From IMG/VR virus record IMGVR_UViG_3300028920_000001, positions 186,001 to 250,000 of that record: a stretch of 64,000 nucleotides of DNA. One strand, 5' to 3'. Below the pieces are notes generated by a model, which saw only the letters and a program-made list of their open reading frames with translations, was not told the origin of the DNA and did not search any database. A program made the translations under genes and the position numbers. This document shows positions 2,662 to 62,781 of the stretch, one piece after another (the first letter of the stretch is position 1; every line of letters begins with the position of its first letter).

Positions 2662-2991
2662 GTGCAATTGATATTTGAAGCTGACTGCGTAATTCGAGAT
2701 TTTGTTCCAGTTGTCTTTGACGCCGCTGGTTGGTCTGATGTTGCTCAGAAGATTAGAGCACTCCCGCCCCTGGAAAACGCTGAAGCGATTATTGAAGCGT
2801 TTGAATACTTAGATATGCTTCAAGGTGAACCACCTAGTGAAGCATGGGCACAAGCAATTGAGGACTGTTGTTTTTGGTGCGAAGCAGCTGTATGGGCCGC
2901 AATTAGAGAGGAACACAATTCCTTCAACGACTATATGGAACGGGCCCAACGAGCTTTAAGTCTCGAATTTAGATCAGTCCCTATTCACTAA
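2662..2991 (+). CDS. hypothetical protein
   Basis: ORF with GAGG SD. Confidence 0.6.
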   Translation: MQLIFEADCVIRDFVPVVFDAAGWSDVAQKIRALPPLENAEAIIEAFEYLDMLQGEPPSEAWAQAIEDCCFWCEAAVWAAIREEHNSFNDYMERAQRALSLEFRSVPIH

Positions 2992-3335
2992 AGCATCATC
3001 ACCTCAATTATAGTGATGTCTTTTTGATTGATCTCTATCCAACCTTGCTCTTTTAAGGATTCAAACCGTAATTTATGTTCATCACAAAATCCAGCTAGAA
3101 CTAAGTCTCCATCTTGGTGCCATTGAAAAGTGATATGGGCAGCAAATCGTGTAGGTTGCCCATCAATTCTGTCGATTTGACGATTGAGTCGATCTTTTTT
3201 GCAAAACAAACACCTGTTTGAATCATTCAATATTCTGGAATTAGGCGACGATAGTTTATCAATCAATTTCATCAAATCATCTGTATCCATAGCAGATTCC
3301 ACTGCATGAAAGAATGATTTAATACTATATTGCAC
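2988..3335 (-). CDS. IMES-tail protein, Cys-rich CxxC...GxCxxH family
   Basis: CLFC...GFCDEH; ends INQKDITIIEVMML. Confidence 0.7.
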   Translation of the reverse strand: MQYSIKSFFHAVESAMDTDDLMKLIDKLSSPNSRILNDSNRCLFCKKDRLNRQIDRIDGQPTRFAAHITFQWHQDGDLVLAGFCDEHKLRFESLKEQGWIEINQKDITIIEVMML

Positions 3336-3378
3336 GTGTTAATCCTAATCGATTACAATGTCATGACCTGTAATCTAT

Positions 3379-4008
3379 CTACGAACACATTACCTCCGAA
3401 GTCAAGACTAACCTACGAGCTTCTTCAACTGTAGAAACGGACTCTATAACAGAAGACTCGAGTTTCAACAAATGGATTAAGAATAAATACTTAGGATTGA
3501 GCGGATCAGATGCCAACAATTTATCAAGCGCTTGATGCACACTTCTAATCTGCCAATCTGACTGAGTAGTAGATTCAGCCTGACTCCTAAAATATCTTTG
3601 AGCTCTATCTAAAATGTCTTCTTCGTTGAAATATGAAATAAACTGTAGAAAATCACTGGACATGGACAACTTGATGAACTGCCTCACCAAGCCAGGACGC
3701 AGAGACTTCCCATAACGCTTATCATATTGCAATGCAAGCTGTGTCAGGCCGACCGAAACCGGGAAAGCTGGCACAATAGCATTTGGCTTCTTCTTGGTCT
3801 GCCAAAATTTAATATCCAATCGCCTGTCAAGATAGACTTGAAGGATGGCGCTAGGATCGCATTTATCACATGAAAATACGTGGTTTTTCACCACACGGTA
3901 AAAAACCTGGTTATCAACTAGGAATTCTCGAACAGGACCGGAGCGGTCACACTTTGGGTGGCCATTATTGCCCACCCCATTCCCTTTGATGGAAATGATG
4001 CAGTCCAT
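3379..4008 (-). CDS. IMES-tail protein
   Basis: ends RRLVLTSEVMCS. Confidence 0.7.
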   Translation of the reverse strand: MDCIISIKGNGVGNNGHPKCDRSGPVREFLVDNQVFYRVVKNHVFSCDKCDPSAILQVYLDRRLDIKFWQTKKKPNAIVPAFPVSVGLTQLALQYDKRYGKSLRPGLVRQFIKLSMSSDFLQFISYFNEEDILDRAQRYFRSQAESTTQSDWQIRSVHQALDKLLASDPLNPKYLFLIHLLKLESSVIESVSTVEEARRLVLTSEVMCS

Positions 4009-4385
4009 TAGTCGTTTGCAGATTGACTACACTGCCAAACTCGACACGGAATCTGGAATTGTACACCGTTATGGGCTTCATGCCAATCATGATGGAAGAA
4101 CCAGAAGTGACCATCCTTGTGATCGTCAGTCAGTGTCAACGTCTTTAGAGGAAGACTCGAGAACAAACTTCCGGAAAAGGAAGCCCACCCCTTTCCAAGG
4201 TACCAAGATCCTCCGTCGGAGCTTTGGAACCACCCATCATCGTAATCCCAGATATGAGAAATCCGACGGACCACTCCATCCGAAAAAAGCACATAGTCAC
4301 CACATCGTGGCCTAGTGCTTTTGTCAAACTCGGCCTGGCGTTCCTTCAAAATCTCGGCGTCTCTATCATCAAACTCTGGATGCAT
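4008..4385 (-). CDS. hypothetical protein
   Basis: GAGGTG SD; 1-nt overlap with next gene. Confidence 0.7.
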   Translation of the reverse strand: MHPEFDDRDAEILKERQAEFDKSTRPRCGDYVLFSDGVVRRISHIWDYDDGWFQSSDGGSWYLGKGWASFSGSLFSSLPLKTLTLTDDHKDGHFWFFHHDWHEAHNGVQFQIPCRVWQCSQSAND

Positions 4386-4484
4386 GTCACCTCTTATGAT
4401 CGAGATACGCGGGCAGATGTTCGATCTTCGCTACGTGCGCACATGCACGCACGTCGCGCGTATACACAGATCAGAAGGTGGCGC

Positions 4485-5057
4485 ATGTATGTAGTGTATA
4501 TACCCAAACTCGAATCAGCTAGGCAGAACCTTCCACTCATCAATGTCTGCGGATACGAAGTCACTGGTAAAAAGACCACTATTTATTACCATAAAGGTCC
4601 TGAGAATCTCGATCTAATCAATAAACCAGACCATTTTAAAATGAGGTCTCTTAGTCTCAGTCGTGCGAAGTCAGCCAAGCATCTTGAATCAACCATCCTA
4701 GATCACTGGTGGCCAGCCTCTCTTCAATTTATTGAAGTTGATGAGCTTGAAGTTGACAGTGCAAACCATGGGGCAGTTAAAGAAGCTAAACAACGTGTTA
4801 AAGTTGCTAAGGAACTAATCAAAACTTTGGCAGAATGGAAGCAGTGCGTCATTCATCTCAGAGGCCAAGTCAAAAAGATCACGGACGGTTCATTCAAGGA
4901 ACTCCGTCATGACAGCAGGAGAGCGGACGCAAAAGAGTACATTAAAGACACTGTAAAGACTTGTGTTTCAGTATATCACATCAAATTTGATGAAATAGTC
5001 GATCTAGCAGAGGAAGCAGTCAAAGAACTTCAAGTTGAAAATATCATGGAAGGATAG
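4485..5057 (+). CDS. IMES-tail protein
   Basis: start MYVVYIPK after promoter motif; ends ELQVENIMEG. Confidence 0.7.
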   Translation: MYVVYIPKLESARQNLPLINVCGYEVTGKKTTIYYHKGPENLDLINKPDHFKMRSLSLSRAKSAKHLESTILDHWWPASLQFIEVDELEVDSANHGAVKEAKQRVKVAKELIKTLAEWKQCVIHLRGQVKKITDGSFKELRHDSRRADAKEYIKDTVKTCVSVYHIKFDEIVDLAEEAVKELQVENIMEG

Positions 5058-5107
5058 GCGCAAATCCAACAGGATTGCACGTATCCCGACATGGAGGTGA
5101 CGCACGC

Positions 5108-5425
5108 ATGCTGACTGAGCAAGACATGCTAAATGCCTTAGACGGAACTCCGGATGGGGCAACCGTCTTTGTGAGTTATAATGCCGGCCGGCCGCCAACG
5201 GCCAGAGCCATCCGTGAAGCCCAGCCTGCAAAAGATATGGGCCTCAATCTGCGTCATTTCGTGGGTAAGCTGTCCAGCGTGTGGATGACCAAGAAAAGCC
5301 AGATTGTAATGACCGTTCTGTGTGACAACCGGTGCAATGAAGACAATGACATGCAACCGCCGCACTACCGGACTTTCAACCCGAGTCTAGGTACCATGCA
5401 TCTCGTCAAGGTGATCGATGCCTGA
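5108..5425 (+). CDS. hypothetical protein
   Basis: promoter motif and GGAGG at 5062-5097. Confidence 0.7.
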   Translation: MLTEQDMLNALDGTPDGATVFVSYNAGRPPTARAIREAQPAKDMGLNLRHFVGKLSSVWMTKKSQIVMTVLCDNRCNEDNDMQPPHYRTFNPSLGTMHLVKVIDA

Positions 5426-5672
5426 CGTACAGCTCCTAAGAACCAAGATAGAAAATCTTGGATCAATGACTTATTGGAAAATTCATTTCATGCTAGGTCC
5501 CCAACGCTTTCTCATGACCTTCATCGACGATCATCATAAAACATATCGTCTGTACAGACGAGAGCCTCGTTATAATCCCACATCTTGTCAGGATGTAACC
5601 GACGATCCAACCTCCTCAGAGGCTATGAAAGCCGGTAAGCAAGTCTTAATTCAAGAGGTGATGGAAACATGA
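5418..5672 (+). CDS. IMES-tail protein
   Basis: ends KQVLIQEVMET. Confidence 0.7.
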   Translation: MPDVQLLRTKIENLGSMTYWKIHFMLGPQRFLMTFIDDHHKTYRLYRREPRYNPTSCQDVTDDPTSSEAMKAGKQVLIQEVMET

Positions 5673-6067
5673 GAATTTATCTCTCAATGGAAGATGAAAA
5701 CCGGTCATTCGAGACGGAACATCAATTTAGTACCGTCTCATCTGAAAACGAGCTTCATGAAATCATTAGGCGCCTGACCGTAGAAACATGGTCTAGCCTG
5801 ACTGAAAATCGTGGAGTATTGCTCCAGGCAGTGCCTCGTTCCAACTGGATACAAGCGATTAAGATCGTCCGAAATCATTCGGACATGGGCTTGAAAGAAG
5901 CTAAGGATTTCGTCGAACGAGTAATTGATGGCGTCCCATTAGCTTTTCTTGTAAATTTGAAAGATAGAGACGTAATAACTTGCGTAGAACAACTAACGCA
6001 AATTGATTGCAAAGCGACGCCATGTACCAAAGCTGAATATGATGTGTGTGAATTGATGGGGTCGTAA
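5669..6067 (+). CDS. ribosomal bL12 (L7/L12) C-terminal-like domain protein with IMES tail
   Basis: IQAIKIVR...MGLKEAKDFVE is the bL12 CTD signature; ends CTKAEYDVCELMGS. Confidence 0.75.
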   Translation: MRIYLSMEDENRSFETEHQFSTVSSENELHEIIRRLTVETWSSLTENRGVLLQAVPRSNWIQAIKIVRNHSDMGLKEAKDFVERVIDGVPLAFLVNLKDRDVITCVEQLTQIDCKATPCTKAEYDVCELMGS

Positions 6068-8306: not shown

Positions 8307-8510
8307 ATGCAACATCCTGAGCAACTCTGTTACTTCATCGACTGGCACTACATGGATGCGCATGGTTGGCCAGAGTGGTTGTGTCGACAACTCCGTAAAG
8401 ATCTTGCCAGCCTGGATGAACTCCAAGATGAATGCGCCGAGATTTTCGTCGAAGCGGTGGAAAAGAAGTACGGTGGAAAATCAATCCACGAACTTCGTAG
8501 CTTAGCATGA
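8307..8510 (+). CDS. hypothetical protein
   Basis: ORF, ATGA overlap with next gene. Confidence 0.55.
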   Translation: MQHPEQLCYFIDWHYMDAHGWPEWLCRQLRKDLASLDELQDECAEIFVEAVEKKYGGKSIHELRSLA

Positions 8511-8716
8511 AGTATTTAATCCAAAGCGGCGGGCTCTTTATTGGTCCCCATGCCTTAGATAAAGGGAAAGCCGGTTGGACGTTTGATCTTAACGAAGCTT
8601 TTCGGTATTCTTCTGTTGAAGAAGCAACCAAAGAACAGGGGAGTCTCAAATTCCCCATTCAAGGAAAGGTGATTACTGAAGACGAAGCTCAAGTTTGGGC
8701 AATCATGAGATCATAA
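8507..8716 (+). CDS. IMES-tail protein, MKYVI...W...A..Y family
   Basis: ends VITEDEAQVWAIMRS. Confidence 0.75.
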   Translation: MKYLIQSGGLFIGPHALDKGKAGWTFDLNEAFRYSSVEEATKEQGSLKFPIQGKVITEDEAQVWAIMRS

Positions 8717-9438: not shown

Positions 9439-9690
9439 ATGAAGCAAAATTTACTACAGCTCGCACAAAATACTCCTGGAACTGTAAACCCTAACGGGTA
9501 TCATACCTGGACACTTCATATAGCGTCGCATCTAGGAAATACTTGGAGATGTACGAGATGCAATTTTATTTATCCTAGTGGTAGTACCAGTCTTTTGATT
9601 AAACCATGCATCCACCAAGTGGACGATCAAGGACATTTTTGCAGAGATAGAATTCGTTCTCAGTTGATAGAAGAAGTCATGGAATCATGA
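9439..9690 (+). CDS. IMES-tail protein, HxW...CxRC family
   Basis: ends SQLIEEVMES. Confidence 0.75.
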   Translation: MKQNLLQLAQNTPGTVNPNGYHTWTLHIASHLGNTWRCTRCNFIYPSGSTSLLIKPCIHQVDDQGHFCRDRIRSQLIEEVMES

Positions 9691-9995
9691 CTTTTCTTGA
9701 TCCTTCTAAAATAGTGCAGGTATCTGACTATTCATATGATTGCTACGAATGCTCGCGCCTAGGGCTCTTACATCGAGATCATCCGATCACAGGTTATGCT
9801 ATAACCACCATTAGCATGTGGTCTACTAACCCATTAGCCCCACTTTCTGAAAAAGAACGTTTAGTGGAAATATTGATTCGTGGATTCTGTAAAGAACATG
9901 ACCACATCCACACTTATCGTAACTATCCTAATTGGACGTGTATATCTAAGTCCGAATACGAACTACTTCAAGTAATTCAAACGATGCTAGAATGA
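9687..9995 (+). CDS. IMES-tail protein, Cys-rich family
   Basis: CYEC...GFCKEH; ends LLQVIQTMLE. Confidence 0.7.
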   Translation: MTFLDPSKIVQVSDYSYDCYECSRLGLLHRDHPITGYAITTISMWSTNPLAPLSEKERLVEILIRGFCKEHDHIHTYRNYPNWTCISKSEYELLQVIQTMLE

Positions 9996-10210
9996 GAGAT
10001 ATAGTCTATATCAAAGGCTTCGCCTGGCATAAGAAATGCTCCACTGGCTGCGGTAGACCTCCCACTCATTGGTATTCTTTAGAAACCCTATCTAGCACCC
10101 GAATCCAGATATTCGGTAGATGCGAAAAGCACCGACGTAATCCTTTACCTAAAAACTGTTACTGTGTGCCTATCCCAGATCCCATTGTGTTCATAGTAAT
10201 GGCATCATGA
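9992..10210 (+). CDS. IMES-tail protein, Cys-rich family
   Basis: GRCEKH; ends PIVFIVMAS. Confidence 0.7.
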   Translation: MRDIVYIKGFAWHKKCSTGCGRPPTHWYSLETLSSTRIQIFGRCEKHRRNPLPKNCYCVPIPDPIVFIVMAS

Positions 10211-10473
10211 TCAACTTCGATAAATATGTAAGACTAGTCGATCGTTCAAACGTCTGTGAAGCTTGTCTTGCTCGAAATCCTCAAAATTCACCTACGTCTT
10301 GGGTTTATCGAGAATTTCTAGCTAAAGAACGATCAAACAAATTGGTCTGTCATGTTATCGGCCTTTGCAATCATCATCTCAATGATCAGGATGCGCTTTT
10401 AAAAGCTGGTTGGGAGTGGATTTCTAAAGAAGACTTGAAGCTATTCAGAATTGCCCTCCTTATGAAGTCATGA
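10207..10473 (+). CDS. IMES-tail protein, Cys-rich family
   Basis: CEAC...GLCNHH; ends FRIALLMKS. Confidence 0.7.
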   Translation: MINFDKYVRLVDRSNVCEACLARNPQNSPTSWVYREFLAKERSNKLVCHVIGLCNHHLNDQDALLKAGWEWISKEDLKLFRIALLMKS

Positions 10474-10730
10474 TCTCTATCATCGACAAATCGGACGTCT
10501 GCGTCATTTGCAAACAATATGGTGAGTCCTACGATCCACCAACCGCTTGGAGTATTAAGACTGAAGTCAATGGAATTTTTTCTTCTGGCACTTTTTTAGA
10601 AATTACTGTACTTGGATTTTGCAATGTCCACTCTGATGAATGGAGCGTGCAAGTTCGTAAGCCTCCATGGGAAGATTTACCTTCATGGAAATTAGCTCAA
10701 TTTCAAGCTTTTGTTGTAATGTTTCAGTAA
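10470..10730 (+). CDS. IMES-tail protein, Cys-rich family
   Basis: CVIC...GFCNVH; ends FQAFVVMFQ. Confidence 0.7.
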   Translation: MISIIDKSDVCVICKQYGESYDPPTAWSIKTEVNGIFSSGTFLEITVLGFCNVHSDEWSVQVRKPPWEDLPSWKLAQFQAFVVMFQ

Positions 10731-10931: not shown

Positions 10932-11285
10932 ATGTCACACGAAGTTGATCCAGAGCAGATGCTCGAAAAGGTTGAAACCATAAGGGAGCAGACTACTGAA
11001 TTGATGACAAACCTGTGGCAGTTGAAAGCCAAGATCAAGCAACTGGCCTGGGTAGTTTCTACTCAGGACGAAGACTTATTCAGTCTCTTGCTCAAATTGG
11101 CTGATGTCAAAGATAATATGAGCAAGTATCACACTGAATTACCACCAGACCAGGCCAAGCTAGAACACACAAATCGAGATGCTGCCCATCAAAAATACTG
11201 GTCTGATTTGTGCAATGAAGACCGACGCTTGACTGATAAATTGGCTATAATTGGACGCCAGTTCCGAGAAGCCAAAGAGCCGTGA
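10932..11285 (+). CDS. hypothetical coiled-coil protein
   Basis: promoter motif and GGAGG at 10890-10925. Confidence 0.7.
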   Translation: MSHEVDPEQMLEKVETIREQTTELMTNLWQLKAKIKQLAWVVSTQDEDLFSLLLKLADVKDNMSKYHTELPPDQAKLEHTNRDAAHQKYWSDLCNEDRRLTDKLAIIGRQFREAKEP

Positions 11286-11482
11286 AATATGTAGTTAAGT
11301 GCCGTACAGGATGGTATTGGAATGATTCCATCAGACTGTGGCGGGCAAACTTAGATGAAGCTACTTTATTTACTAAACCACAAGCTATCGAACTAGTAAC
11401 TCTTTTTCAAAAAGACCCGAGCATAGGCGGAGAAGCCAAACTTTTCCGTGAAGAATTGGTCTATCAAATAATGGAATCATAA
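11282..11482 (+). CDS. IMES-tail protein, MKYVI family
   Basis: ends EELVYQIMES. Confidence 0.75.
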   Translation: MKYVVKCRTGWYWNDSIRLWRANLDEATLFTKPQAIELVTLFQKDPSIGGEAKLFREELVYQIMES

Positions 11483-11531
11483 CGACCGGAAATTCTGGCT
11501 CATGCGCCGTACGCATTCGCGGAGGTGACGC

Positions 11532-11936
11532 ATGACTCGACCCGCAACTGGCCCTGGATCCCGTTACGTGGAAGTTCCAGCCCAGGCCATTGAGGATTTC
11601 CTTCAGAGCAAAGGTTTCACCCGTACGACCCAGCGCAACGAGGTCGTTTACGTGCGATCGCATCACGAATGGCCTTGCGTGAAGGTGAAGGTGTATACTT
11701 CCATCAAGGACGGACACACGTCAGTTCGCAAGCGTGGGGCTGATGCCATCAAGGTGTGCACCGTCTATGAAGGCAAAAAGCGAAAGCCTTTTGGGATTGG
11801 CAAGTTCCCGCATGTGCTCCGAACCGGAGATACCCAAGCGGTCTTGGATCGCATGTACGACCGCATGCGTGCAGCATATCGACGTGCCAACGAATGGGTT
11901 GCCAACACTCAGGTTAAACAGGTGATGAACTCTTGA
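11532..11936 (+). CDS. IMES-tail protein
   Basis: promoter motif and GGAGG upstream; ends TQVKQVMNS. Confidence 0.75.
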   Translation: MTRPATGPGSRYVEVPAQAIEDFLQSKGFTRTTQRNEVVYVRSHHEWPCVKVKVYTSIKDGHTSVRKRGADAIKVCTVYEGKKRKPFGIGKFPHVLRTGDTQAVLDRMYDRMRAAYRRANEWVANTQVKQVMNS

Positions 11937-12181
11937 AATACCTGAAGAAAATCGCCAACCGGGCCAAGACCGGGATCTTCAAGCCCTTTCAATGGGAAGG
12001 GACTCAATACAAAATCAAACCAGTTCCAGGTAGAGAGTATAAATGGCTCCTATGGGAGGAACGCCCCTTTTACATGAAGGCCACCTGCATTAGCCTTGAT
12101 GAACTCACAGCTGAAGAACTATTGGGCGCCATCCATCAATTGGTAGCCTACCGTATCCTCGAGGAGATCCACGAATCATGA
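11933..12181 (+). CDS. IMES-tail variant protein
   Basis: ends YRILEEIHES. Confidence 0.65.
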   Translation: MKYLKKIANRAKTGIFKPFQWEGTQYKIKPVPGREYKWLLWEERPFYMKATCISLDELTAEELLGAIHQLVAYRILEEIHES

Positions 12182-12405
12182 CCGGTGAACTCGTCGTCAA
12201 GGCTATCCGCAATCTGGAAACTAATCGTAAAACTGAAGCTAAAATAATGAATGATCTCGGATGGGATGGTCAAGTCTGGGGTGGTATTAGGAGCCTGCTT
12301 CAGACGATAAACAATCATTCCAAGAACGAGCTAAAGCAGCGAGAATCCGAAGGTAAGCTCCCTCTCGGCGTACGTGAAAAAGTCAAGAAGGTGATGGAAT
12401 CATGA
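12178..12405 (+). CDS. IMES-tail protein
   Basis: ends EKVKKVMES. Confidence 0.7.
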   Translation: MTGELVVKAIRNLETNRKTEAKIMNDLGWDGQVWGGIRSLLQTINNHSKNELKQRESEGKLPLGVREKVKKVMES

Positions 12406-14036: not shown

Positions 14037-14444
14037 ATGGGAAGTTCTACCTATAGCGATATCGTTCCATTCGTAGCACCTTGCGTGTACGAATCTAACA
14101 ATCCTTACGAAGAAACACCAAGGATCGGATTTACCCGAGACATGGCCCTCCGTCTCTGTTGTCCTGAAGATGAAGAATGTGACAGCCCTTACAGTCATCA
14201 AGGATGGAAATACCAAAAAGATTCTGAGGAGATTGGTAAACGTCAACGTCTGATTGCAAGAGCTTGGGTCAAAGGCAAACATCGAGTGTGGATTATCAAT
14301 GAATCAGAGTACGCAGCCGGTGGTGATTATCAAATTTCACTTATCGCCAATGATTCAGACTCCATCACAGAATTTGCCAAAGATTGGGACATCGAACTCA
14401 AGCTCGGTATCGAGGAGAATGATACCGTTCAACAGACTCTGTAA
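14037..14444 (+). CDS. hypothetical protein
   Basis: ORF in co-oriented run. Confidence 0.65.
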   Translation: MGSSTYSDIVPFVAPCVYESNNPYEETPRIGFTRDMALRLCCPEDEECDSPYSHQGWKYQKDSEEIGKRQRLIARAWVKGKHRVWIINESEYAAGGDYQISLIANDSDSITEFAKDWDIELKLGIEENDTVQQTL

Positions 14445-14718
14445 ATGTGGTCGAAATTCATCAGCAATGAGAAAAGAATTCATCAATTACACCAGATACG
14501 TTGTCTGGCATGAGTATCACGGCTTCATCTCTGCCAAGTCGGATTCACGTAGTAAATTTTGGACTAAAGATCTTGAACGCGCAGCCTATTGGAAAAGAGA
14601 AGACGAAGCCTATATTAATCGAAGAGAATTGATAGACTGTGGAATCGTAACCAGTCTTTCCGCCGTGCATGTTATGAATTGGAACCAAGTTTTGATTCAG
14701 GAATTGATGGAATCATGA
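14419..14718 (+). CDS. IMES-tail protein, MKYVI family
   Basis: RYVVW...FWTKDLERAAYW; ends QVLIQELMES. Confidence 0.7.
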   Translation: MIPFNRLCKCGRNSSAMRKEFINYTRYVVWHEYHGFISAKSDSRSKFWTKDLERAAYWKREDEAYINRRELIDCGIVTSLSAVHVMNWNQVLIQELMES

Positions 14719-17535: not shown

Positions 17536-17538
17536 ATT

Positions 17539-44869: not shown

Positions 44870-44870
44870 A

Positions 44871-51050: not shown

Positions 51051-51063
51051 TTGTACTATTTAA

Positions 51064-51585
51064 ATGATGATTACGTTTGTTCAATACAGATTAGCTGATG
51101 GTGAAATTGCACCTCGTTGTAAGAGTAACTGTATTGGTCTTTCGTCAAATGCTTTAAAGAGTAATAAAAAGTGGTCCTGTTTACAAATTACGGATCATCC
51201 TCCATTATTTGAATTTTCGAGCAATTACACTATATTAATTTCTCAAATTAACCAACTGAATTTTAAATGCACTAATAAATGGTTACAAAAAATGGCATAT
51301 GAAAAGTTTGTCCAAGATTTTCAAGATTTTTTAGAAAGACAAATATTTAGTGTTTGGCATAGTTGTCCTTTCGTGACTGTTATTTTTGAGCCACTCAATG
51401 TTTCACCAGCTGATAGTCCTCCATCTAAAGGGATGGTTCATTTTATTAACATGACTTTAGTTATGGGGAATCAGCCAGTAGCAAAATCTAATTGTTGCGA
51501 AAAGTGGCTCCCTAAATTTTGGGATTCAGATTTTGTTCAGGAACGTCGTAACTTTTATATGGTTGAAAGGATCATGCAATTATAA
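51064..51585 (+). CDS. IMES-tail protein
   Basis: ends YMVERIMQL. Confidence 0.7.
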   Translation: MMITFVQYRLADGEIAPRCKSNCIGLSSNALKSNKKWSCLQITDHPPLFEFSSNYTILISQINQLNFKCTNKWLQKMAYEKFVQDFQDFLERQIFSVWHSCPFVTVIFEPLNVSPADSPPSKGMVHFINMTLVMGNQPVAKSNCCEKWLPKFWDSDFVQERRNFYMVERIMQL

Positions 51586-51776
51586 TGCCTGTTACTCAAG
51601 TGACTCCGTATATGATGAAACCAGGACAATATGTTCGACAAGGTGATCATCTGTCTATAGTTGAATCTTGTGAATTTTGTAATAAGCCCAGATCGATATT
51701 TAATGGGAAGTGGGTTTCAAAGATGAGAGCTCCAACCGAGAAAGAACATATTGTGTCTGATGTGATGCAAACGTAG
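51585..51776 (+). CDS. IMES-tail protein, SH3-like family
   Basis: ends PTEKEHIVSDVMQT. Confidence 0.7.
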   Translation: MPVTQVTPYMMKPGQYVRQGDHLSIVESCEFCNKPRSIFNGKWVSKMRAPTEKEHIVSDVMQT

Positions 51777-52340: not shown

Positions 52341-52540
52341 TCAAGAACGAATTGCTGAGCTCGAGCAACGAATCGCTGAGCTTGAATATGCTCTAGCTGG
52401 AACAATGATTTCATTGTCTTCTCGGGATGGTGTAATACCTGATCCTCATATAATTCAAGCGATGCAGGCGAGTAAACAAGTTCAATTTAAAATTATGTTT
52501 GATGACGAACGCATAATAATGGTCAAACTTGAAATTAAAG

Positions 52541-52918
52541 ATGCGTGAAGAAGTATTTAACGTAAAATTTCTACATTATTGCTACGAAATCTTTATCCGA
52601 GGTCCTGGTTATCGGGTTGAGCGTATTACTGTAAGTCCATATGATTATCAAGATATTCTTAAAGGCGGTAAAGAAACGTTAGATCTAACAAATAATCGTT
52701 TTGATTTAAAAAGAGGAAAAGTAGCTACCCTTTTTGGAACAGACTTGTATGTAAACAAAATTGCTCCTATTGGAATAATTGAAATTAAACATGGTAGACA
52801 TAAAATTAAAACATCTCATGTGTTTATTTCAACCTGGGAAAGTCATTCGGGAGCCATTTTAGATTGTAGACATGCTTCTTGTAGAAAGTATTTAATTGCT
52901 CATATAATGGAGACCTAG
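52541..52918 (+). CDS. IMES-tail protein resembling a fragment of a major capsid protein
   Basis: RVERITVSPYDYQDILKGG...LKRGKVATLFGTDLYVNKIAPIG; ends YLIAHIMET. Confidence 0.55.
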   Translation: MREEVFNVKFLHYCYEIFIRGPGYRVERITVSPYDYQDILKGGKETLDLTNNRFDLKRGKVATLFGTDLYVNKIAPIGIIEIKHGRHKIKTSHVFISTWESHSGAILDCRHASCRKYLIAHIMET

Positions 52919-53003
52919 ATCCAAATGTAAGTTTAAATAGTGAAGATCCTGATCCCCCTTGGGATCTTCCGAGAGCCTGGATACCCTCCGGGCTCTTGTT
53001 TAT

Positions 53004-53207
53004 TTAGAAATAATTCCAGAGAATGTCTCTCTTATATTTATTTTTAATAATATCAAATTTATCACTTTGAATGAAGTGACAAGTTACTCGTCGCCTTCTT
53101 CTATTACTTTCTTGCTTCCAGCTTTTCAGGGAAGGAAAGTATCCCCAATAACGACAATTGTGATGTTTGGCCCGATGGATATTTTTGCGTCGATAGTTGA
53201 TGTGCAT
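53004..53207 (-). CDS. small basic protein
   Basis: Arg-rich ORF. Confidence 0.55.
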   Translation of the reverse strand: MHINYRRKNIHRAKHHNCRYWGYFPSLKSWKQESNRRRRRVTCHFIQSDKFDIIKNKYKRDILWNYF

Positions 53208-53234
53208 ACTTAAGTCATAACCAAACCTCCAAGT

Positions 53235-53639
53235 CTATTTTACAGTCTGCACAAAATCCTTGATTTCATTAGGTGGATAACCTGATAAGTAACCGACTAA
53301 GTAATGATAATCTTTTCCAGTTAAATTATCCTGACACCATCTTAGTAATTTAGCCATGTCTCTATTTTCAGGCAAATATGCAGATACACCGTCAGATTCC
53401 AGGCCGTATTTTTCAGCGTTTTCTTTAAGTTCATCCTCTCGCCAACCATGTGTTAATGGTTTAGTTCCTTTTTTAACAAATCGACAGGCTTTTTCAACTG
53501 AATAGTCCCAGCCTTTAGTTTTAGGGTCCCAATTCACTGCTTTTTCAAACGCTGGAATATATTCTTCAGGCACCTTATCTTTTATGATAGATACCATTGA
53601 ATCTTCCGTCATTTTACGTGCAATCTTAAATAGATCCAC
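53235..53639 (-). CDS. hypothetical protein with N-terminal MDLFKIARK motif
   Basis: C-terminal GYLSGYP..EI..F. Confidence 0.7.
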   Translation of the reverse strand: MDLFKIARKMTEDSMVSIIKDKVPEEYIPAFEKAVNWDPKTKGWDYSVEKACRFVKKGTKPLTHGWREDELKENAEKYGLESDGVSAYLPENRDMAKLLRWCQDNLTGKDYHYLVGYLSGYPPNEIKDFVQTVK

Positions 53640-53913
53640 GCTTCAATGACTAGATAAAAATTTAATGGAAAAGTTTAAATGCCTTCTTCTTGATCTCCCT
53701 CTCGCCAGTCATGAAGACCCAGGCTAATGCTTGGGTCTTCGTTTATTTGGGAAGGTATCTATTTCTTCTTGATTAAACTTAATTATTATTTCTTCTACAG
53801 ATTTCCATTCATGTTCACATTGTTTGCAACGATAATAAGTAAGCACATTTATACCATCTGAATGGCCGCCTAATCTTTCTATAAATCTATGATCACACAG
53901 AGATAATAATGAA

Positions 53914-54141
53914 TTAAACTGTCATGATTTTGAGCACATTAGCTTCTTTACAGTCTATTGGGACTCCAACGTGTTTTAATAATTCACCAGGAGTAGTTTT
54001 CTTTAATTTGTCGAGCTTAATTTTTGTTCCTCGAGTAGTAATTCTGTGACCACAACCCGGACAGCACCAAGTTCGATGAAGAGTCGGTTGTGCTTCTCTA
54101 ATCTTCACCCAATTATGCTGCTTCATATTTTCATATACCAC
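53914..54141 (-). CDS. IMES-tail protein, HxW...CxxC family
   Basis: ends KEANVLKIMTV. Confidence 0.7.
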   Translation of the reverse strand: MVYENMKQHNWVKIREAQPTLHRTWCCPGCGHRITTRGTKIKLDKLKKTTPGELLKHVGVPIDCKEANVLKIMTV

Positions 54142-56496: not shown

Positions 56497-56832
56497 GGTA
56501 TACTAAGCTGGGATAAGCCTAAGAAAGTCAAGGAAACTGGAACTTGTTATAAGTATGAATCCAACATGAGCAAAGAAGATGAACAAAAATGGAAAGCTAA
56601 AATTGTTGGTCATCGAGTTGGGAAACCTAGAATTGAAATTCGAAAGATAATGAATGGAACCAATATTAAGGTAATTATTTCAGATGGGAAAAATAAAGGA
56701 ATGAAGCATGCACTTCCTGGATGCAACGTTCATTTATCATTAAATGGAACTTGCCAAATGTCCTTTATAGAATACGATGAACTACATCAAGCCATTGAAG
56801 AAGCTCGAGCAGTAATGGAACAAGCTTTGTAG
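56494..56832 (+). CDS. hypothetical protein
   Basis: TGTA-N10-ATG. Confidence 0.7.
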   Translation: MGILSWDKPKKVKETGTCYKYESNMSKEDEQKWKAKIVGHRVGKPRIEIRKIMNGTNIKVIISDGKNKGMKHALPGCNVHLSLNGTCQMSFIEYDELHQAIEEARAVMEQAL

Positions 56833-57155
56833 TGGGTATCAGGTCTTTGCCAAAGCCTATGGGATGGAAACCCCCGCCTTTTCCAAGGCAATCATCTTTT
56901 CAAGAAATCATAAAACGAAAAGAGAAAAGTGCACGAAGAGCATTGTGTTTAAATAAAATAATAATTATCTCTAGTGCTTCTGCTTCAATTTTTAACATGG
57001 TCTCTGCTATTATTCAATGGCGACCTTTTGCATCTAGCTTAAGTTTAATGGGTTCAATCTGTTTTTTGGTTATTACCCTAATATATTTGAAGGGTCGATC
57101 AAACTTAGTTAATGAATTAGATAATGTGATGGTGGAAAATATTATGGAATCCTAA
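56832..57155 (+). CDS. IMES-tail protein with two TM segments
   Basis: ends NVMVENIMES. Confidence 0.7.
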   Translation: MGIRSLPKPMGWKPPPFPRQSSFQEIIKRKEKSARRALCLNKIIIISSASASIFNMVSAIIQWRPFASSLSLMGSICFLVITLIYLKGRSNLVNELDNVMVENIMES

Positions 57156-57169
57156 TATTAAATTAGGAT

Positions 57170-57595
57170 GTGAATGTTAGTGAAATAATTAAAGATCAAT
57201 TATGGATAGGGAGTAAACCTGATCCCGGTACTTATTGTTTCGATTTAATTGTATTAGCTGCATATGAATATCCGCTACGAATCGTGGGTTCTATTGAAGG
57301 ACCTAAAATAATCGAGGTTGGACTCTCGGACCGAGAATTAAATAATCAACAAGTAACTCGAGCTCTAGAAGCCGCTCAAACAGTAGCTAAATACTTATCA
57401 GAGGGAAAGAAGGTTTGTTGTACTTGTGCGATGGGTATTAACCGGTCTTCTTTAGTGGCTGCCTTATCCTTGGTATTATTAGGCGTATCCCCTCGGAGGG
57501 TAATCTCAAGGATAAGGAAAGCTCGAGGAATAGCCTTGACTAATCCTTGGTTCATTGAACAGATTTATGAAACCTATTTAGGTATAAAGCCCTAA
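57170..57595 (+). CDS. dual-specificity/protein-tyrosine phosphatase family protein
   Basis: CX5R active site CAMGINRS; LWIGS; LTNPWF. Confidence 0.85.
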   Translation: MNVSEIIKDQLWIGSKPDPGTYCFDLIVLAAYEYPLRIVGSIEGPKIIEVGLSDRELNNQQVTRALEAAQTVAKYLSEGKKVCCTCAMGINRSSLVAALSLVLLGVSPRRVISRIRKARGIALTNPWFIEQIYETYLGIKP

Positions 57596-57604
57596 TCTAA
57601 TTAT

Positions 57605-58363
57605 TTGAATGTGAAAAGAAACGCTGCAATAGTCACGATGGAAGATTTAACCAACTTCTTCAAGGGGGAAGCTTGGAAGTCTGTTGATTTAAGAGATTCA
57701 GAATTGTTTGCTAGAGCGAATCAAGCTATAGTTAACGTTGAGGAAAGTGAAACTCAGTATAATGTTAAAATTCAAGCTATAGATGACCCTTATGATTCTG
57801 AAGAAGTCACTACTGGAGAACCGATTAAGGCCATTGTTGATTTTTTAGGGGAGGGACTTCCAGGGGCTGAGTATTTTGAACAAATGGCTTCCAGTCCAAG
57901 AGCTTTTGCATCATACTTGAATTTATTAGCTTATCAAATAGACAAAAAGAATATTGATAAGAAAACGTTGATCGAAACCCTGCGTAGGGTTTCGGTAGCC
58001 TTAAATCGTAACCTATTGCATCATATTGTAATAGCTATGACTAGACTTGCACGGGAAAATGTTGAACAAAAGGAAATGAGTAAATTGCTTAGCGAAATGA
58101 AGAAAAAGGGTTGGAAAGTTAAAGAATCTGAAGATGATCGTGGGGAACTTCAATTAACTGTAAACATATCGGATATTTACGAAGTTGTTATCTCGGTTGA
58201 GAGCATATTATATGATTATATCTTCCAAATCCCAGATCATCCAGATTTAACTGAAGATGGAATAACTGACGACCCTATTCGAGAATTTCAGAAATATGTC
58301 AAAAAACATGACGAGGTGATGTCTTCTATCAAGAGCCCGGAAAATATGGAAATTAGGGCCTGA
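57605..58363 (+). CDS. hypothetical protein (possible virion protein)
   Basis: long acidic ORF. Confidence 0.7.
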   Translation: MNVKRNAAIVTMEDLTNFFKGEAWKSVDLRDSELFARANQAIVNVEESETQYNVKIQAIDDPYDSEEVTTGEPIKAIVDFLGEGLPGAEYFEQMASSPRAFASYLNLLAYQIDKKNIDKKTLIETLRRVSVALNRNLLHHIVIAMTRLARENVEQKEMSKLLSEMKKKGWKVKESEDDRGELQLTVNISDIYEVVISVESILYDYIFQIPDHPDLTEDGITDDPIREFQKYVKKHDEVMSSIKSPENMEIRA

Positions 58364-58383
58364 AATTTGTATATTTATATAGA

Positions 58384-58752
58384 ATGCGAATCAAGAGCTT
58401 TAAGATTACTAATGGATTGATATCAATCGAACTAGAAAGATATGAAGCAGATATTATTCTTGAAAAAGTTTCTGATATCATTCGACAGTTAACACGAATC
58501 AACCCTGACCCCGAAAATTTTACTAAAATTTGTCGAGCTGCACTGATTTGTCACAAGCTTTCGAAGCCCGGTAATACTGTTTCTTTAGACAATTTATCTA
58601 AAGAAGACATGAATATTCTTTGTAATTTAAATCTAAATGGTACGATTGTTAATGACTTAAGTGGGCTTAGGATGATAGCTCGATCTTGTGTCATGACCAT
58701 GGTCGAGGCTGACCAGATAGCTAAAGATTTCGAAAATGTAATGACTTGTTAA
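58384..58752 (+). CDS. IMES-tail protein
   Basis: ends KDFENVMTC. Confidence 0.6.
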   Translation: MRIKSFKITNGLISIELERYEADIILEKVSDIIRQLTRINPDPENFTKICRAALICHKLSKPGNTVSLDNLSKEDMNILCNLNLNGTIVNDLSGLRMIARSCVMTMVEADQIAKDFENVMTC

Positions 58753-58767
58753 TTGATTCTTTCAGAT

Positions 58768-59151
58768 ATGAAACCGGGCCATCTTCAGAGGATTGCTAGT
58801 AGGCTTGCGGCTGATTTAGATGGAGATCAGAGCAAGAAATCTACACAGTGGAAGTCGTTCCTTAAGCAATTAACTAAAAGTCTTGACCATGGCGTCAAGG
58901 AATTAGAACAAATTATTTTTAATGTGAATCATAATACAAAGCTTCAGGATTTAAAGGGAAACCCTGAAGCCATTCAAATGATTGAAGCTGAAAAAGAAAA
59001 TCTAGTTAGGACGTTAAAATCAAAGAGCGAGAGACTTCAAACAGTCATGGAAGCACTGAAAGAAGCTGAATCTGACCTTGATGACGTTTATTCGGCAATC
59101 AATGCGCTCGAGGAGAGTGCTGAACAAGCTAAGGAATCTAAGACTCCATAA
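58768..59151 (+). CDS. coiled-coil protein with N-terminal LQRIASRLA motif
   Basis: MKPGHLQRIASRLAAD. Confidence 0.7.
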   Translation: MKPGHLQRIASRLAADLDGDQSKKSTQWKSFLKQLTKSLDHGVKELEQIIFNVNHNTKLQDLKGNPEAIQMIEAEKENLVRTLKSKSERLQTVMEALKEAESDLDDVYSAINALEESAEQAKESKTP

Positions 59152-59644
59152 TTTTAGGAAGATATTTCACAGCATCTTTTCTTACAGCTGTTTTAATTAC
59201 ATTAGCTGTATAGGCTCCGAATTTTTTAAATTTTGGCCTCTTTTGTATCGGTAATCTCAGATTATACTGTAATTTTCTTCTTGGTATAACTGCTCTTACC
59301 CAAGTTTTCTTTAGGGGATAATGTAAATAATTTACCCTTCCAACATTAAGTTCAAGCCAATTTTTTGCAATTAAGATTTCTACACTTAGCCATTCATCTC
59401 CGACTGGATAAATGAAATTTCCATAAACAATGTTTGTTATTTTGAAATAGAGAGTATGACAGGATTTTAAAGGTCTTAGATTTTCATATTTGAGAATAAT
59501 TCCTCTATTGGTAAGGGCACGCAAGAAAGCCCTGATGCCCATTTCATGATAAGGAATCTTGAGATTAGAGATGCTGTTATTTTGGGTAGTTAGCATACTC
59601 TGAACAACTCCGGACTGATATCTATCAATGGCGCGCATGTCCAA
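59138..59644 (-). CDS. IMES-tail protein
   Basis: ends KYLPKIMES. Confidence 0.7.
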   Translation of the reverse strand: MDMRAIDRYQSGVVQSMLTTQNNSISNLKIPYHEMGIRAFLRALTNRGIILKYENLRPLKSCHTLYFKITNIVYGNFIYPVGDEWLSVEILIAKNWLELNVGRVNYLHYPLKKTWVRAVIPRRKLQYNLRLPIQKRPKFKKFGAYTANVIKTAVRKDAVKYLPKIMES

Positions 59645-61025: not shown

Positions 61026-61909
61026 CCTGGTGTCCTTATGGTAGTAAGTATTTTTTCAACTTTTCGGTCTAAATCTTCTAGAGTCTTGTCATTGTTAATT
61101 ACAAAGTCAAAAGCTCCATCTTCAATCGTGGCTTGTTCAGTTTCTGAACGATGATTGAAAGGAGGTTTGTCGATTCCAGGTCGTTTAATTCTGATAAGGG
61201 CCGGGGTTAAAGCCGGTCCGGCTTTGTTACGAAGATAATTAATTTCATGTTTATGCCTGAAGTCAGCGAAGCAAGTTATAATAACATTTTCTTTAATCAC
61301 TGGGCCATGATTATTAGGTCCATAATATTTTTTAAGTCCTTCCATTTGGCTATACCTGTATTGAGCCAGATTCACGCCAGTTTTAAAAAAATAAGTTTCA
61401 GCTAGTTTTAGACTGGTATCGATCCCTTTATGGATCCAAGTATCTCCATAAAGGGTATTCATGAGTTCGCAGTATTTTTGAAGGGCTTCTCGAGGGGAGA
61501 GCCAAAAACGGGGATCGCCTTGTTGTATAAAGATCCTGGCACTTCCCAACCTAAGTGGGATATAAGGATCATTATTATTGTAAGTTTTTCCAACTCGGTC
61601 TCTTCCCTCAAACCACCAATAAGTGGCGTTATCATCCCAATCTCCAATTAATCCCTCACCTTCCGGTTTAGGACCATTCCATAATCGTAATTTTTCCATT
61701 GCTGGTTTAGGATAACGGAGATCACCACCATTTCGAAATTCACTTGGACCAAATAGCTGCTGCTCTGTAAATTCATAAAGATCAGCCATGTGTCGCTTAG
61801 CTGGGTCGGCTAAACCTAATTGGATTGCGCCCCTCTTTACAAGACTTTTTGCTACTTCATCTTTTCCAGAGCCGGAGAAACCTGATATACCAATACAAAT
61901 GTTCCTCAT
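60998..61909 (-). CDS. deoxynucleoside monophosphate kinase
   Basis: GISGFSGSGKD, LADP.K, PREALQ, DFR..HE, HRSE, INND..LEDL. Confidence 0.85.
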   Translation of the reverse strand: MRNICIGISGFSGSGKDEVAKSLVKRGAIQLGLADPAKRHMADLYEFTEQQLFGPSEFRNGGDLRYPKPAMEKLRLWNGPKPEGEGLIGDWDDNATYWWFEGRDRVGKTYNNNDPYIPLRLGSARIFIQQGDPRFWLSPREALQKYCELMNTLYGDTWIHKGIDTSLKLAETYFFKTGVNLAQYRYSQMEGLKKYYGPNNHGPVIKENVIITCFADFRHKHEINYLRNKAGPALTPALIRIKRPGIDKPPFNHRSETEQATIEDGAFDFVINNDKTLEDLDRKVEKILTTIRTPGWTPLQGTV

Positions 61910-61933
61910 GAATAATTATACATTTCAAAAACA

Positions 61934-62308
61934 ATGACAGACACAAGAGATTATCAAGATACTTTTCAGTATTTAACTGAACTAATTAAATCATATAAGA
62001 GGAGACTACGAAAAAGAATAGTTAAGAAAAATCGTAAATCTCGATTTGTACCTTCAGATGCTATTATTGTTCCCCCTGATCATGAAATTTCGCCCATTAT
62101 GCCGTCTGCTTATTTAAAGAACCTCCGTATAGTTTTTCTTTCTACTAGTCATGGCATTGGGATGACTTGTATCCTTCCTGATGAGCTCACTTCGTTTACA
62201 ACTCCGCCTAAATCTGTTCATTGTATTAATGTCCATACCTTAAGTTCTAAGCGACTAGCACGATTCATAACTTATGATTGGATGGTGGAAGATATTATGG
62301 AATCCTAG
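61934..62308 (+). CDS. IMES-tail protein
   Basis: ends WMVEDIMES. Confidence 0.7.
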   Translation: MTDTRDYQDTFQYLTELIKSYKRRLRKRIVKKNRKSRFVPSDAIIVPPDHEISPIMPSAYLKNLRIVFLSTSHGIGMTCILPDELTSFTTPPKSVHCINVHTLSSKRLARFITYDWMVEDIMES

Positions 62309-62781
62309 CTATTCATCAAATCTTGAACTAAAGATAAATCAACAGCTTCTCTAATCTTTTCTTCTGATATTCCTCGTTGTTTGGCTATAGTAACTATCTC
62401 AATTATATCTTCAATCAATGCGCTTTCCGGAATAGGTTCTCTTATGGCTTTCTCAGGGGAGCTAAAATACTCAAGATCACCCTCATATTGTATTTCTTTG
62501 GATGTCACTCTAAAATTACTTCGAATTTGTCGATTGGAATGGGTTAGATTTTCTAATATGTGTCCTATATAATGGTTCATTTTGTCTGATTTAATATGAT
62601 CAAAATAGGCAATAGGTCGTTTTGTACGAATCGCTTCTCGAATAAATCCGATAGCCAATAAAAATGTTCGTCCTTGACCCCGGTTCTTACTATTTAAAAG
62701 CCAGTTGATAGTTCGAAGGTGACTTAATTGATCATCGTTAAGTCGAGCTACTAGGTCATAATAATATTGCCAACCACTCAT
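62305..62781 (-). CDS. IMES-tail protein with degenerate P-loop-like motif
   Basis: NRGQGRTFLLA; ends SLVQDLMNS. Confidence 0.7.
   Translation of the reverse strand: MSGWQYYYDLVARLNDDQLSHLRTINWLLNSKNRGQGRTFLLAIGFIREAIRTKRPIAYFDHIKSDKMNHYIGHILENLTHSNRQIRSNFRVTSKEIQYEGDLEYFSSPEKAIREPIPESALIEDIIEIVTIAKQRGISEEKIREAVDLSLVQDLMNS

What the first reader, a model, noticed from the sequence alone, without database searches (positions are those of the whole stretch)
2988..62781. About 59 unrelated small proteins share one C-terminal 'IMES' tail: a candidate phage adaptor or sorting system
Seen: by my count 59 ORFs end in [IVLMT]-M-x-x-stop, with Met exactly third from last. The full consensus is [IV][ST]xxE[YAFL]x[VI]xx[IVL]M[EDQT]S, e.g. 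ITEEEFVIAQIMQS, VSKEEYIVAKIMES, ISTDELEVRLIMES, LPLKEAEIREVMES. It looks like an amphipathic helix ending at the free carboxyl terminus. It is attached to at least four unrelated N-terminal families, to TM proteins, and to a bL12-like domain. It is absent from all recognisable enzymes (ligase, PolX, NADAR, kinase, DHH, lysin). Codons vary: Ser is TCA, TCG, TCT, TCC, AGT (51050) or AGC (46269, 62305), and all three stops are used, so selection acts on the peptide. Inference: a constant docking tail on variable head domains is how adaptor libraries are built (compare F-box/PRANC tails, TPR-bound MEEVD, C-terminal secretion signals, degrons). The tail may plug many target-binding modules into one phage hub (protease or AAA+ unfoldase, capsid loading, or a compartment) to neutralise many host proteins. 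I know of no described phage system like this.
Basis: partly seen in the sequence, partly recalled or inferred. Interest (0 to 1): 0.95.

Follow-up and report, generated by a model that had tools for sequence, protein, structure and literature searches.

The report
Shared C-terminal tag on megaphage proteins
About half of the small accessory proteins of an uncultured 427-kb phage, and of its relatives, end in the same short helix with a methionine exactly third from the end, which looks like an address label read by one still unknown partner; no such phage system has been described.

Summary
59 credible ORFs in the window end [IVL]-M-x-x-stop. The full 16-residue motif occurs at 49 C-termini and at none of 46,584 internal positions. 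Selection acts on the peptide: third codon positions carry no information, and half of the tails have no coupled downstream gene. The tail sits on at least four head families that BLASTP, hhalign and Foldseek neighbours do not connect. It also sits on two membrane proteins (cytoplasmic end) and on a bL12-like protein. Every enzyme recognised here lacks it.

The window comes from a 427-kb IMG/VR phage contig. The same tail is enriched in most related loci, which lie on 23 to 436 kb contigs. The residue at -3 changes in concert by lineage: Met, Gln or Val/Ile/Leu. That pattern, with synonymous sites not homogenised, argues for one shared reader.

AlphaFold puts the tail as a short strand plus a terminal helix in two different folds. 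No Pfam or PHROG model covers it, and my literature searches found no description. Best reading: a C-terminal docking tag (confidence 0.55).

The parts
2988..6067 (.). Five tail ORFs: 2988-3335(-), 3379-4008(-), 4224-5057(+), 5418-5672(+) and 5669-6067(+, bL12 C-terminal-domain-like).
   Evidence: 3379-4008 has tail-bearing orthologues in L004, L009, L011, L012 and L014.
8507..8716 (+). Family B tail ORF. Its stop lies 1 nt before an intron-split tRNA.
9439..10730 (+). Five tandem tail ORFs with ATGA overlaps, starting at 9439, 9687, 9992, 10207 and 10470. The last four belong to the Zn-type family A.
11282..12405 (+). Tail ORFs 11282-11482, 11532-11936 and 12178-12405, plus the variant 11933-12181 that ends with His in place of Met.
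14254..14718 (+). Tail ORF of 154 aa.
17260..18413 (+). Tail ORFs 17260-17535, 17908-18168 and 18165-18413.
22502..26601 (-). Array of 13 tail ORFs, mostly family B, with two family A members and one membrane protein (22921-23346). 24176-24373 is a tail gene cut by an in-frame TAA inside its tail.
41464..42215 (.). Tail ORFs 41464-41682(+), 41745-41948(-) and 41949-42215(-).
43231..45143 (.). Six tail ORFs: 43231, 43887, 44156, 44371 and 44597 on the + strand, and 44871-45143 on the - strand. The last two are convergent, with their stops 1 nt apart.
46039..46880 (.). Tail ORFs 46039-46269(+), 46270-46644(-) and 46641-46880(-). The first two are convergent and abut each other.
47927..48884 (.). 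Tail ORFs 47927-48154(+) and 48573-48884(-).
49297..51776 (+). Seven tail ORFs starting at 49297, 49545, 49813, 50140, 50523, 51064 and 51585.
52529..54141 (.). Tail ORFs 52529-52918(+) and 53914-54141(-).
56832..59644 (.). Tail ORFs 56832-57155(+, membrane protein with two hydrophobic segments), 58384-58752(+) and 59138-59644(-).
61934..62781 (.). Convergent pair of tail ORFs, 61934-62308(+) and 62305-62781(-), whose stops overlap by 4 nt.
1265..2407 (-). MoxR-like AAA ATPase without a tail. It is the only conserved candidate reader in view, and this role is unproven. I used it as the marker to find relatives.

Best explanation
The tail is a proteome-wide C-terminal docking tag of one clade of uncultured megaphages. 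It is a short strand followed by an 11 to 14 residue helix that ends the protein. One face of the helix carries V/I at -7, I/V/L at -4 and Met at -3, followed by an acidic or polar residue, usually Ser, and the free carboxylate. I propose that this face and the chain end plug into one shared cytoplasmic receptor, which measures from the carboxyl end. This would give a large class of small accessory proteins a common fate. What is shown: the motif exists, it is restricted to the C-terminus, selection is on the peptide, the heads are diverse, it is conserved across the clade, and the -3 residue shifts by lineage. What is inferred: that it is read in trans, and which helix face is used. The fate is not decided.
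For: Strict register: 49 terminal against 0 internal full-motif matches, and Met only at -3. Peptide-level selection: the second codon positions of -7 and -4 carry 1.6 to 1.9 bit and the third positions 0.07 and 0.01 bit; six Ser codons and three stop codons are used; there is no information downstream of the stop. Independence from neighbouring genes: 29 tails are followed by a coupled gene, 17 are convergent and 13 have a gap over 12 nt, and the tail is at least as canonical without coupling. Heads unrelated: with tails trimmed, BLASTP finds only 5 pairs; hhalign probabilities between families A to D are at most 1.1%; the family B model has BFVD neighbours with TM 0.55 to 0.66, while the family A model has no match above TM 0.4 and none of B's listed neighbours. 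The family B head also occurs as tail-less tandem repeats inside long proteins. In two membrane proteins the tail follows the last hydrophobic segment by 19 to 20 residues, after basic residues. Clade-wide: enriched in L004, L006, L007, L009, L011, L012, L014, L015 and L016, weaker in L008 and L010, and in nearly all of about 35 family B homologues from public data. Concerted change at -3: Met in 57 of 66 selected window C-termini, Gln in 9 of 14 in L007, Val/Ile/Leu in 18 of 20 in L011 plus L012. Fisher p for Met versus other residues is 3e-7 for the window against L007 and 5e-13 for the window against L011 plus L012. Orthologous proteins follow the flavour of their lineage. Universal residues (-7, -4, -3) fall on one helical face. 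The family-specific residue at -9 (Ala in family B; aromatic in examples from A, C and D) falls on the opposite face. This last point is my inference from helix geometry.
Against: No receptor was found. AlphaFold predicts the tail as an ordered, confident part of the fold (pLDDT 77 to 97), so the conserved face could be buried within the protein; I could not inspect coordinates. The lineage shift could reflect a shared machine such as the ribosome or a host protease rather than a dedicated receptor. The only conserved candidate nearby, the MoxR ATPase with its DUF2201 partner, also occurs where no tails were detected (L013). Only about 80 of the 427 kb of the genome were seen.
Confidence: 0.55

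Rival explanations
1. The tail is an intramolecular cap. A terminal helix would close small domains and leave a polar or acidic chain end. This would stabilise tiny proteins or shield them from host proteases that attack non-polar C-termini. No common partner would be needed.
For: AlphaFold places the tail inside compact, confident folds. The family B fold, terminal helix included, resembles many small phage proteins in BFVD. The mean side-chain charge of the last 14 residues is -1.6.
Against: Packing against unrelated cores does not require the same V, I/V, Met and Ser, nor an exact distance to the chain end. It does not predict that dozens of unrelated proteins switch Met to Gln or to aliphatic residues together. 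The membrane proteins carry the tail on a short stub with no domain to cap.
Confidence: 0.18
2. The tail acts as a nascent chain inside the ribosome at termination. The last 14 residues would sit in the exit tunnel at the stop codon and tune release, recycling or re-initiation, under the host's or the phage's translation factors.
For: The register is exact relative to the stop codon. 29 of 59 tails are followed by an overlapping or abutting start. The phage encodes tRNAs and a bL12-like protein. A change of host ribosome could explain the lineage-specific flavours.
Against: All three stop codons are used, there is no downstream context, and the Ser codons used are decoded by different tRNAs. 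The tail is equally present at convergent gene ends. The amphipathic pattern and the capping box are typical of a folded helix, and AlphaFold folds it.
Confidence: 0.08
3. All tail proteins are one hyper-diverged paralogous superfamily, and the tail is its last conserved core. The 'unrelated heads' would then be an illusion of sequence divergence.
For: The models of families A and B share the same order of elements: three strands, one or two helices, a strand and a terminal helix. The genes lie in tandem arrays.
Against: hhalign probabilities are at most 1.1% and the Foldseek neighbours differ. The tail is also on membrane proteins, on a bL12-like protein and on 150 to 280 aa helical ORFans. 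Common descent alone would still need a reason for the exact chain end and the concerted shift. Gene conversion is unlikely because synonymous sites are not homogenised.
Confidence: 0.1
4. The tail is a DNA or RNA signal: the imprint of a Shine-Dalgarno sequence or coupling signal for the next gene, or a terminator.
For: In the 1 to 27 kb part, some tails read GAG GTG ATG, which resembles an extended Shine-Dalgarno sequence. TCATGA and TAATG overlaps are common.
Against: 30 of 59 tails have no coupled downstream gene. Third codon positions are uninformative. In the 41 to 64 kb part the tails are ATT ATG GAA with no Shine-Dalgarno sequence, and the genes there start without one. In L007 Met is replaced by Gln.
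Confidence: 0.02

Closest known systems
C-terminal sorting signals of eukaryotes (peroxisomal SKL-type PTS1 read by a TPR receptor; KDEL/HDEL retrieval signal). From my own knowledge.
   Same: Short tag at the exact chain end of many unrelated proteins, read by one receptor. The consensus differs between lineages together with the receptor.
   Different: Those tags are 3 to 4 residues long, unstructured and belong to membrane-bound organelles. Here the tag is a 14-residue strand plus helix in a phage of bacteria, with no known compartment or receptor.
Terminal docking motifs of chaperone and protease machines (EEVD bound by TPR clamps; hydrophobic-Tyr-X tails of proteasomal ATPases). From my own knowledge.
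   Same: Hydrophobic plus acidic residues in fixed register with the free carboxylate.
   Different: Those motifs occur on a few machine components, not on half of an accessory proteome. The last residue here is Ser, and no TPR or proteasome-like partner was seen in the window.
C-terminal degrons (the ssrA tag and ClpX C-motifs). From my own knowledge.
   Same: Position at the extreme C-terminus and dependence on the chain end. A class-wide fate is conceivable.
   Different: Known bacterial C-degrons are non-polar or basic and unstructured. This tail ends acidic/Ser and is predicted to be folded.
Encapsulation peptides of bacterial microcompartments and cargo-loading peptides of encapsulins. 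From my own knowledge.
   Same: A terminal amphipathic helix or peptide on unrelated cargo proteins that docks onto a protein shell. Encapsulin shells are of the HK97 phage-capsid type.
   Different: Those peptides are joined by flexible linkers, have a different consensus and serve a handful of cargos. No shell gene was seen here.
Hub-binding tails in phage replication (C-terminal clamp-binding tails of T4 gp43, gp33 and gp55; acidic tail of SSB and of T7 gp2.5). From my own knowledge.
   Same: In phages, several unrelated proteins use a similar C-terminal tail to bind one hub.
   Different: Three to a dozen proteins, all in DNA transactions. Here the DNA enzymes are exactly the proteins that lack the tail.
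C-terminal translocation signals of type IV secretion substrates, and poxvirus ankyrin-PRANC adaptor families. From my own knowledge.
   Same: Hundreds of unrelated proteins, or variable heads, share a C-terminal element rich in Glu and small polar residues, with a hydrophobic residue near -3. That element couples them to one machine.
   Different: Those signals are loose and disordered, or are a folded F-box-like domain, and they belong to cellular secretion or ubiquitin systems that are not known in phages.
[quoted passage not shown]
   Same: A large phage sorts its own proteins selectively.
   Different: No conserved signal sequence was found there. Recognition uses a surface patch and the importer PicA (PMC11087766). 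Here there is an obvious linear signal but no known destination.

Membership tests
Shine-Dalgarno or translational-coupling imprint | A same-strand start codon within about 15 nt downstream of the stop. | tested here: not met
   30 of 59 tails are convergent or followed by a gap over 12 nt.
Shine-Dalgarno or translational-coupling imprint | Conservation at the nucleotide level, synonymous sites included. | tested here: not met
   Third codon positions at -7 and -4 carry 0.07 and 0.01 bit.
ssrA-like or ClpX-type C-degron | Located at the extreme C-terminus. | tested here: met
ssrA-like or ClpX-type C-degron | Non-polar (LAA-like) or basic last residues. | tested here: not met
   The tail mostly ends E/D/Q then Ser.
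ssrA-like or ClpX-type C-degron | Binding to and degradation by an unfoldase-protease. | not testable with these tools
   Needs biochemistry or complex prediction.
Microcompartment encapsulation peptide | Terminal amphipathic helix of about 15 to 20 residues. | tested here: met
Microcompartment encapsulation peptide | Flexible linker between the cargo domain and the peptide. | tested here: not met
   The tail's strand and helix directly continue the fold, with no low-confidence linker.
Microcompartment encapsulation peptide | Shell proteins encoded by the same genome. | tested here: inconclusive
   None among the Pfam hits in the window, but about 80% of the genome was not seen.
Encapsulin cargo-loading peptide | Gly/Ser/Leu-rich consensus near the C-terminus. 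| tested here: not met
   The consensus here is V-x-x-[IV]-M-[ED]-S.
Sortase or exosortase type sorting domain | A motif followed by a transmembrane helix and a basic cluster. | tested here: not met
   No hydrophobic segment follows the motif, and the tail has net charge -1.6.
TPR-clamp ligand (EEVD type) | Acidic residues and a terminal Asp at the chain end. | tested here: inconclusive
   E/D at -2 in 31 of 59 tails, but the last residue is Ser in 38 of 59. No TPR protein among the Pfam hits in the window.
Any curated protein family (Pfam-A, PHROGs) | A profile that matches the tail region in many members. | tested here: not met
   No family is shared by more than one of the 59 proteins.
Single paralogous gene family | Detectable homology between the heads. 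| tested here: not met
   One real family (B) of 12 to 15 members does exist within the set.

The most novel reading that the evidence does not exclude
A clade of megaphages runs its own protein-addressing system. A helical C-terminal 'postcode' on roughly a hundred or more unrelated accessory proteins per genome would be read by a dedicated receptor that co-evolves with it (Met, Gln or aliphatic flavours). The receptor would deliver the proteins, and perhaps host proteins bound to them, to a common destination such as a protease or remodelling machine, a compartment or the capsid. This would be the first linear sorting signal known in viruses of bacteria.
Probability: 0.4. Interest if true: 0.92.

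Novelty: categorically new. Interest (0 to 1): 0.86.

Why it matters
Most genes of huge phages are small ORFans with no handle for study. A shared tag would group a large part of them into one functional class. It would also give an experimental hook: a peptide for pull-downs and a transferable tag for reporters. And it would point to an unknown hub at the centre of the infection programme. If a receptor exists, tag and receptor would make a compact, orthogonal recruitment or turnover module for bacterial synthetic biology. They would also be the first case in bacterial viruses of signal-based protein sorting, which has been looked for in nucleus-forming phages without success (PMC11087766).

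Tried and rejected
- **Shine-Dalgarno or coupling imprint:** rejected.
- **Stop-codon recoding as the reason for the short ORFs at 27.7 to 41 kb:** no alternative code gives clean long ORFs. The region turned out to hold small genes behind a repeated upstream element.
- **Known domain:** Pfam and PHROGs give nothing for the tail, nor for ten 200 to 280 aa tail proteins, nine from relatives and one from the window.
- **Word-based homologue search with family B:** found only near-identical strain variants. The full HMMER search was needed.
- **DNA similarity to GenBank phages:** none. By protein, the ATPase has only distant cultured relatives.
- **Source names for NCBI relatives:** none held.
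- **Host:** relatives are binned with a Lentisphaeria MAG and a Methylobacter MAG, which does not settle it.
- **A DNA pattern for a collection-wide census:** only 2 matches in the window, so not worth a scan.
- **Idea that the 200 to 280 aa tail proteins form one family:** not supported, although two orthologous groups exist.
- **Enrichment of sigma-70-like promoters in the tail region:** none (69 found, 69.7 expected). So 'early genes' remains an inference.
- **PDB fold search for family B:** no match.
- **Literature:** five searches found no description of such a tail.
Full report
**Observation.** A six-frame ORF scan finds 63 ORFs of at least 40 aa that end [IVLMT]-M-x-x-stop.
- Among 406 open stretches of at least 60 codons, Met sits at -3 in 67, and at every other position from -1 to -15 in only 2 to 10.
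- Positions that played no part in the selection are conserved too: V/I at -7 in 50 of 59, Ser at -1 in 38, Glu at -10 in 23 and at -5 in 21.
- A PSSM of the last 16 residues scores above 14 bits at 49 C-termini and at none of 46,584 internal windows.
- A 50-kb stretch of the unrelated jumbo phage PBS1 shows no such signal.

**DNA or peptide.** At codons -7 and -4 the second base carries 1.6 to 1.9 bit and the third base 0.07 and 0.01 bit. Ser is encoded by six codons, all three stop codons are used, and there is no information after the stop.
- 29 tails are followed by a coupled start, 17 are at convergent gene ends and 13 are followed by a gap over 12 nt.
- The tail is at least as canonical where nothing is coupled.
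- Several convergent pairs abut or overlap at their stops (44869/44871, 46269/46270, 62305-62308).
- The resemblance of GAG GTG ATG to a Shine-Dalgarno sequence, seen in the first 27 kb, is therefore incidental. In the 41 to 64 kb part neither the tails nor the gene starts contain one.

**What carries the tail.** Median length is 88 aa, range 63 to 277.
- With tails trimmed, BLASTP links only five pairs.
- A head-only HMM iteration recovers one real family, B, with 12 members.
- By inspection and alignment there are also a CxxC...C-x-x-H family (A, 10 members), an SH3-like family (C) and a pair (D).
- hhalign between these head profiles gives probabilities of at most 1.1%.
- Two proteins have hydrophobic segments, with the tail 19 to 20 residues after the last one, following basic residues. 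This places the tail in the cytoplasm.
- One protein has part of a bL12 C-terminal domain.
- Proteins with recognisable domains lack the tail: the AAA ATPase, ligase, PolX, NADAR, a dual-specificity phosphatase, DHH, dNMP kinase, a KH protein, the lysin and a transposase-like protein.
- 17 genes preceded by a conserved element, GTAGATC...CGTATCC...GGAGG, also all lack it. These include PolX and the small genes of the GC-rich island at 28 to 41 kb (Fisher p 1e-4).

**Structure.** AlphaFold models of a family B member (39-sequence alignment, pLDDT 90.8) and a family A member (10 sequences, pLDDT 88.2) both end in a short strand followed by a terminal helix, with pLDDT 77 to 97.
- The B model has many uncharacterised small phage proteins as fold neighbours in BFVD (TM 0.55 to 0.66) and none in the PDB.
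- The A model has no match above TM 0.4 and none of B's listed neighbours.
- So the tail is an ordered element attached to different folds, not a floppy peptide. I could not inspect coordinates.
- From helix geometry, the universally conserved residues (-7, -4, -3) lie on one face. The family-specific residue at -9 (Ala in 32 of 39 family B sequences; aromatic in examples from A, C and D) lies opposite. This suggests one face packs on the protein's own head and the universal face is free. This is inference.

**Origin and relatives.** The window is part of IMGVR_UViG_3300028920_000001, 426,960 bp. Nothing similar exists among GenBank phages at DNA level.
- The AAA ATPase has hundreds of relatives at 54 to 70% identity, many on contigs of 190 to 436 kb. 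I fetched 13 related loci around it.
- Tails are enriched in most of them, on proteins of up to about 330 aa. They also continue on the same contig outside the window (L002 and L003).
- A full HMMER search with the family B profile found about 45 single-domain homologues, and nearly all of the about 35 that I read end in the tail. The head alone matches tandem repeats inside long proteins that have no tail.

**Lineage-specific flavours.** I selected C-termini only on positions -16 to -4 and then read position -3.

| Loci | Residue at -3 |
|---|---|
| Window, L004, L009, L014, L015, L016 | Met (57 of 66 in the window) |
| L007 | Gln (9 of 14) |
| L006 | Met and Gln |
| L011, L012 | Val/Ile/Leu (18 of 20) |

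- Fisher p for Met versus other residues is 3e-7 for the window against L007 and 5e-13 for the window against L011 plus L012.
- Orthologous tail proteins next to the ATPase follow the flavour of their lineage.
- Synonymous sites are not homogenised, so gene conversion is unlikely. GC content does not track the change: L004 and L014 are as GC-rich as L006 but keep Met.
- A concerted change across unrelated proteins is what co-evolution with one reader predicts.

**Candidate reader.** None is established. In 12 of the 14 loci compared, the ATPase gene is followed, 0 to about 4 kb downstream, by a protein of about 450 to 525 aa with DUF2201_N (putative metallopeptidase) and DUF2201 (VWA-like) domains. 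Two tail-bearing orthologous groups lie nearby. The pair is also present in L013, where I detected no tails, and more distant relatives of the ATPase occur in many cultured phages. So it is a lead only.

**Verdict.** The feature is real, strong and clade-wide, and no Pfam or PHROG model or paper that I could find describes it. In nucleus-forming phages, by contrast, no signal sequence could be found (PMC11087766). The most likely reading is a C-terminal docking tag read in trans (0.55). The rivals are an intramolecular cap (0.18), a hyper-diverged superfamily (0.10), a nascent-chain effect at termination (0.08) and a nucleic-acid signal (0.02).

Noticed in passing
window 8717-9040: A tRNA gene with a long variable arm is split by a group I intron (Rfam hit 8739-8996). 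Joining the flanks in a script gives ARAGORN tRNA calls whose anticodon depends on the junction chosen. The gene starts 1 nt after the stop of a tail gene.
   Followed up: partly
window 9172-9245, 10791-10887, 29363-29437: tRNA-Lys(ttt), a 97-nt tRNA-Ile(tat) that probably holds an intron, and tRNA-Met(cat) on the minus strand.
   Followed up: no
window 27700-41000: GC-rich island (0.52 to 0.58, against 0.34 to 0.49 elsewhere) of small tail-less genes. At least 13 of them are preceded by a conserved element of about 45 nt: GTAGATC, then about 17 nt, then CGCGTATCC, then 6 to 7 nt, then GGAGGCAAC and the start codon. The same element precedes PolX (20014), 5108-5425, 10932-11285 and 27300. It is probably a phage promoter plus ribosome-binding site of another gene class.
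   Followed up: partly
window 29961-30260 and 37472-37771: A 300-nt direct repeat at 71% identity, lying in two paralogous minus-strand genes (29962-30357 and 37473-37874). Both genes are preceded by the element above.
   Followed up: no
window 24176-24373 (-): A tail gene interrupted by an in-frame TAA in the middle of its tail. The same frame continues for ten codons to a second stop, with Met again third from the end. Either a nonsense mutation or read-through. I did not read it through in any search.
   Followed up: partly
window 11933-12181, 21218-21622, 45779-46042: Three ORFs with an otherwise good tail but His or Leu in place of Met at -3.
   Followed up: no
L003:13441-14910 (same contig, about 1.1 to 2.5 kb beyond the window's left end): A 490-aa protein with DUF2201_N (putative metallopeptidase) and DUF2201 (VWA-like) domains. 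It is conserved 0 to about 4 kb downstream of the MoxR-like ATPase gene in 12 of the 14 loci compared.
   Followed up: partly
window 41000-64000: Gene starts here have no Shine-Dalgarno sequence. Upstream regions are A/T-rich, often with a TATAAT-like hexamer a few bases before the ATG. Genes behind the conserved element, by contrast, have a strong GGAGG.
   Followed up: no
window 55604-56476 (-): A 290-aa ORF that matches a PHROG annotated as transposase (phrog_10081), inside the tail-gene region.
   Followed up: no
P0134, P0138, P0141 (public proteins of 1113 to 2419 aa): The family B head domain occurs as 6 to 8 matched stretches in very long proteins of unknown function. Of these, only P0138 was scanned against Pfam, and it had no hit above the cut-off.
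   Followed up: partly
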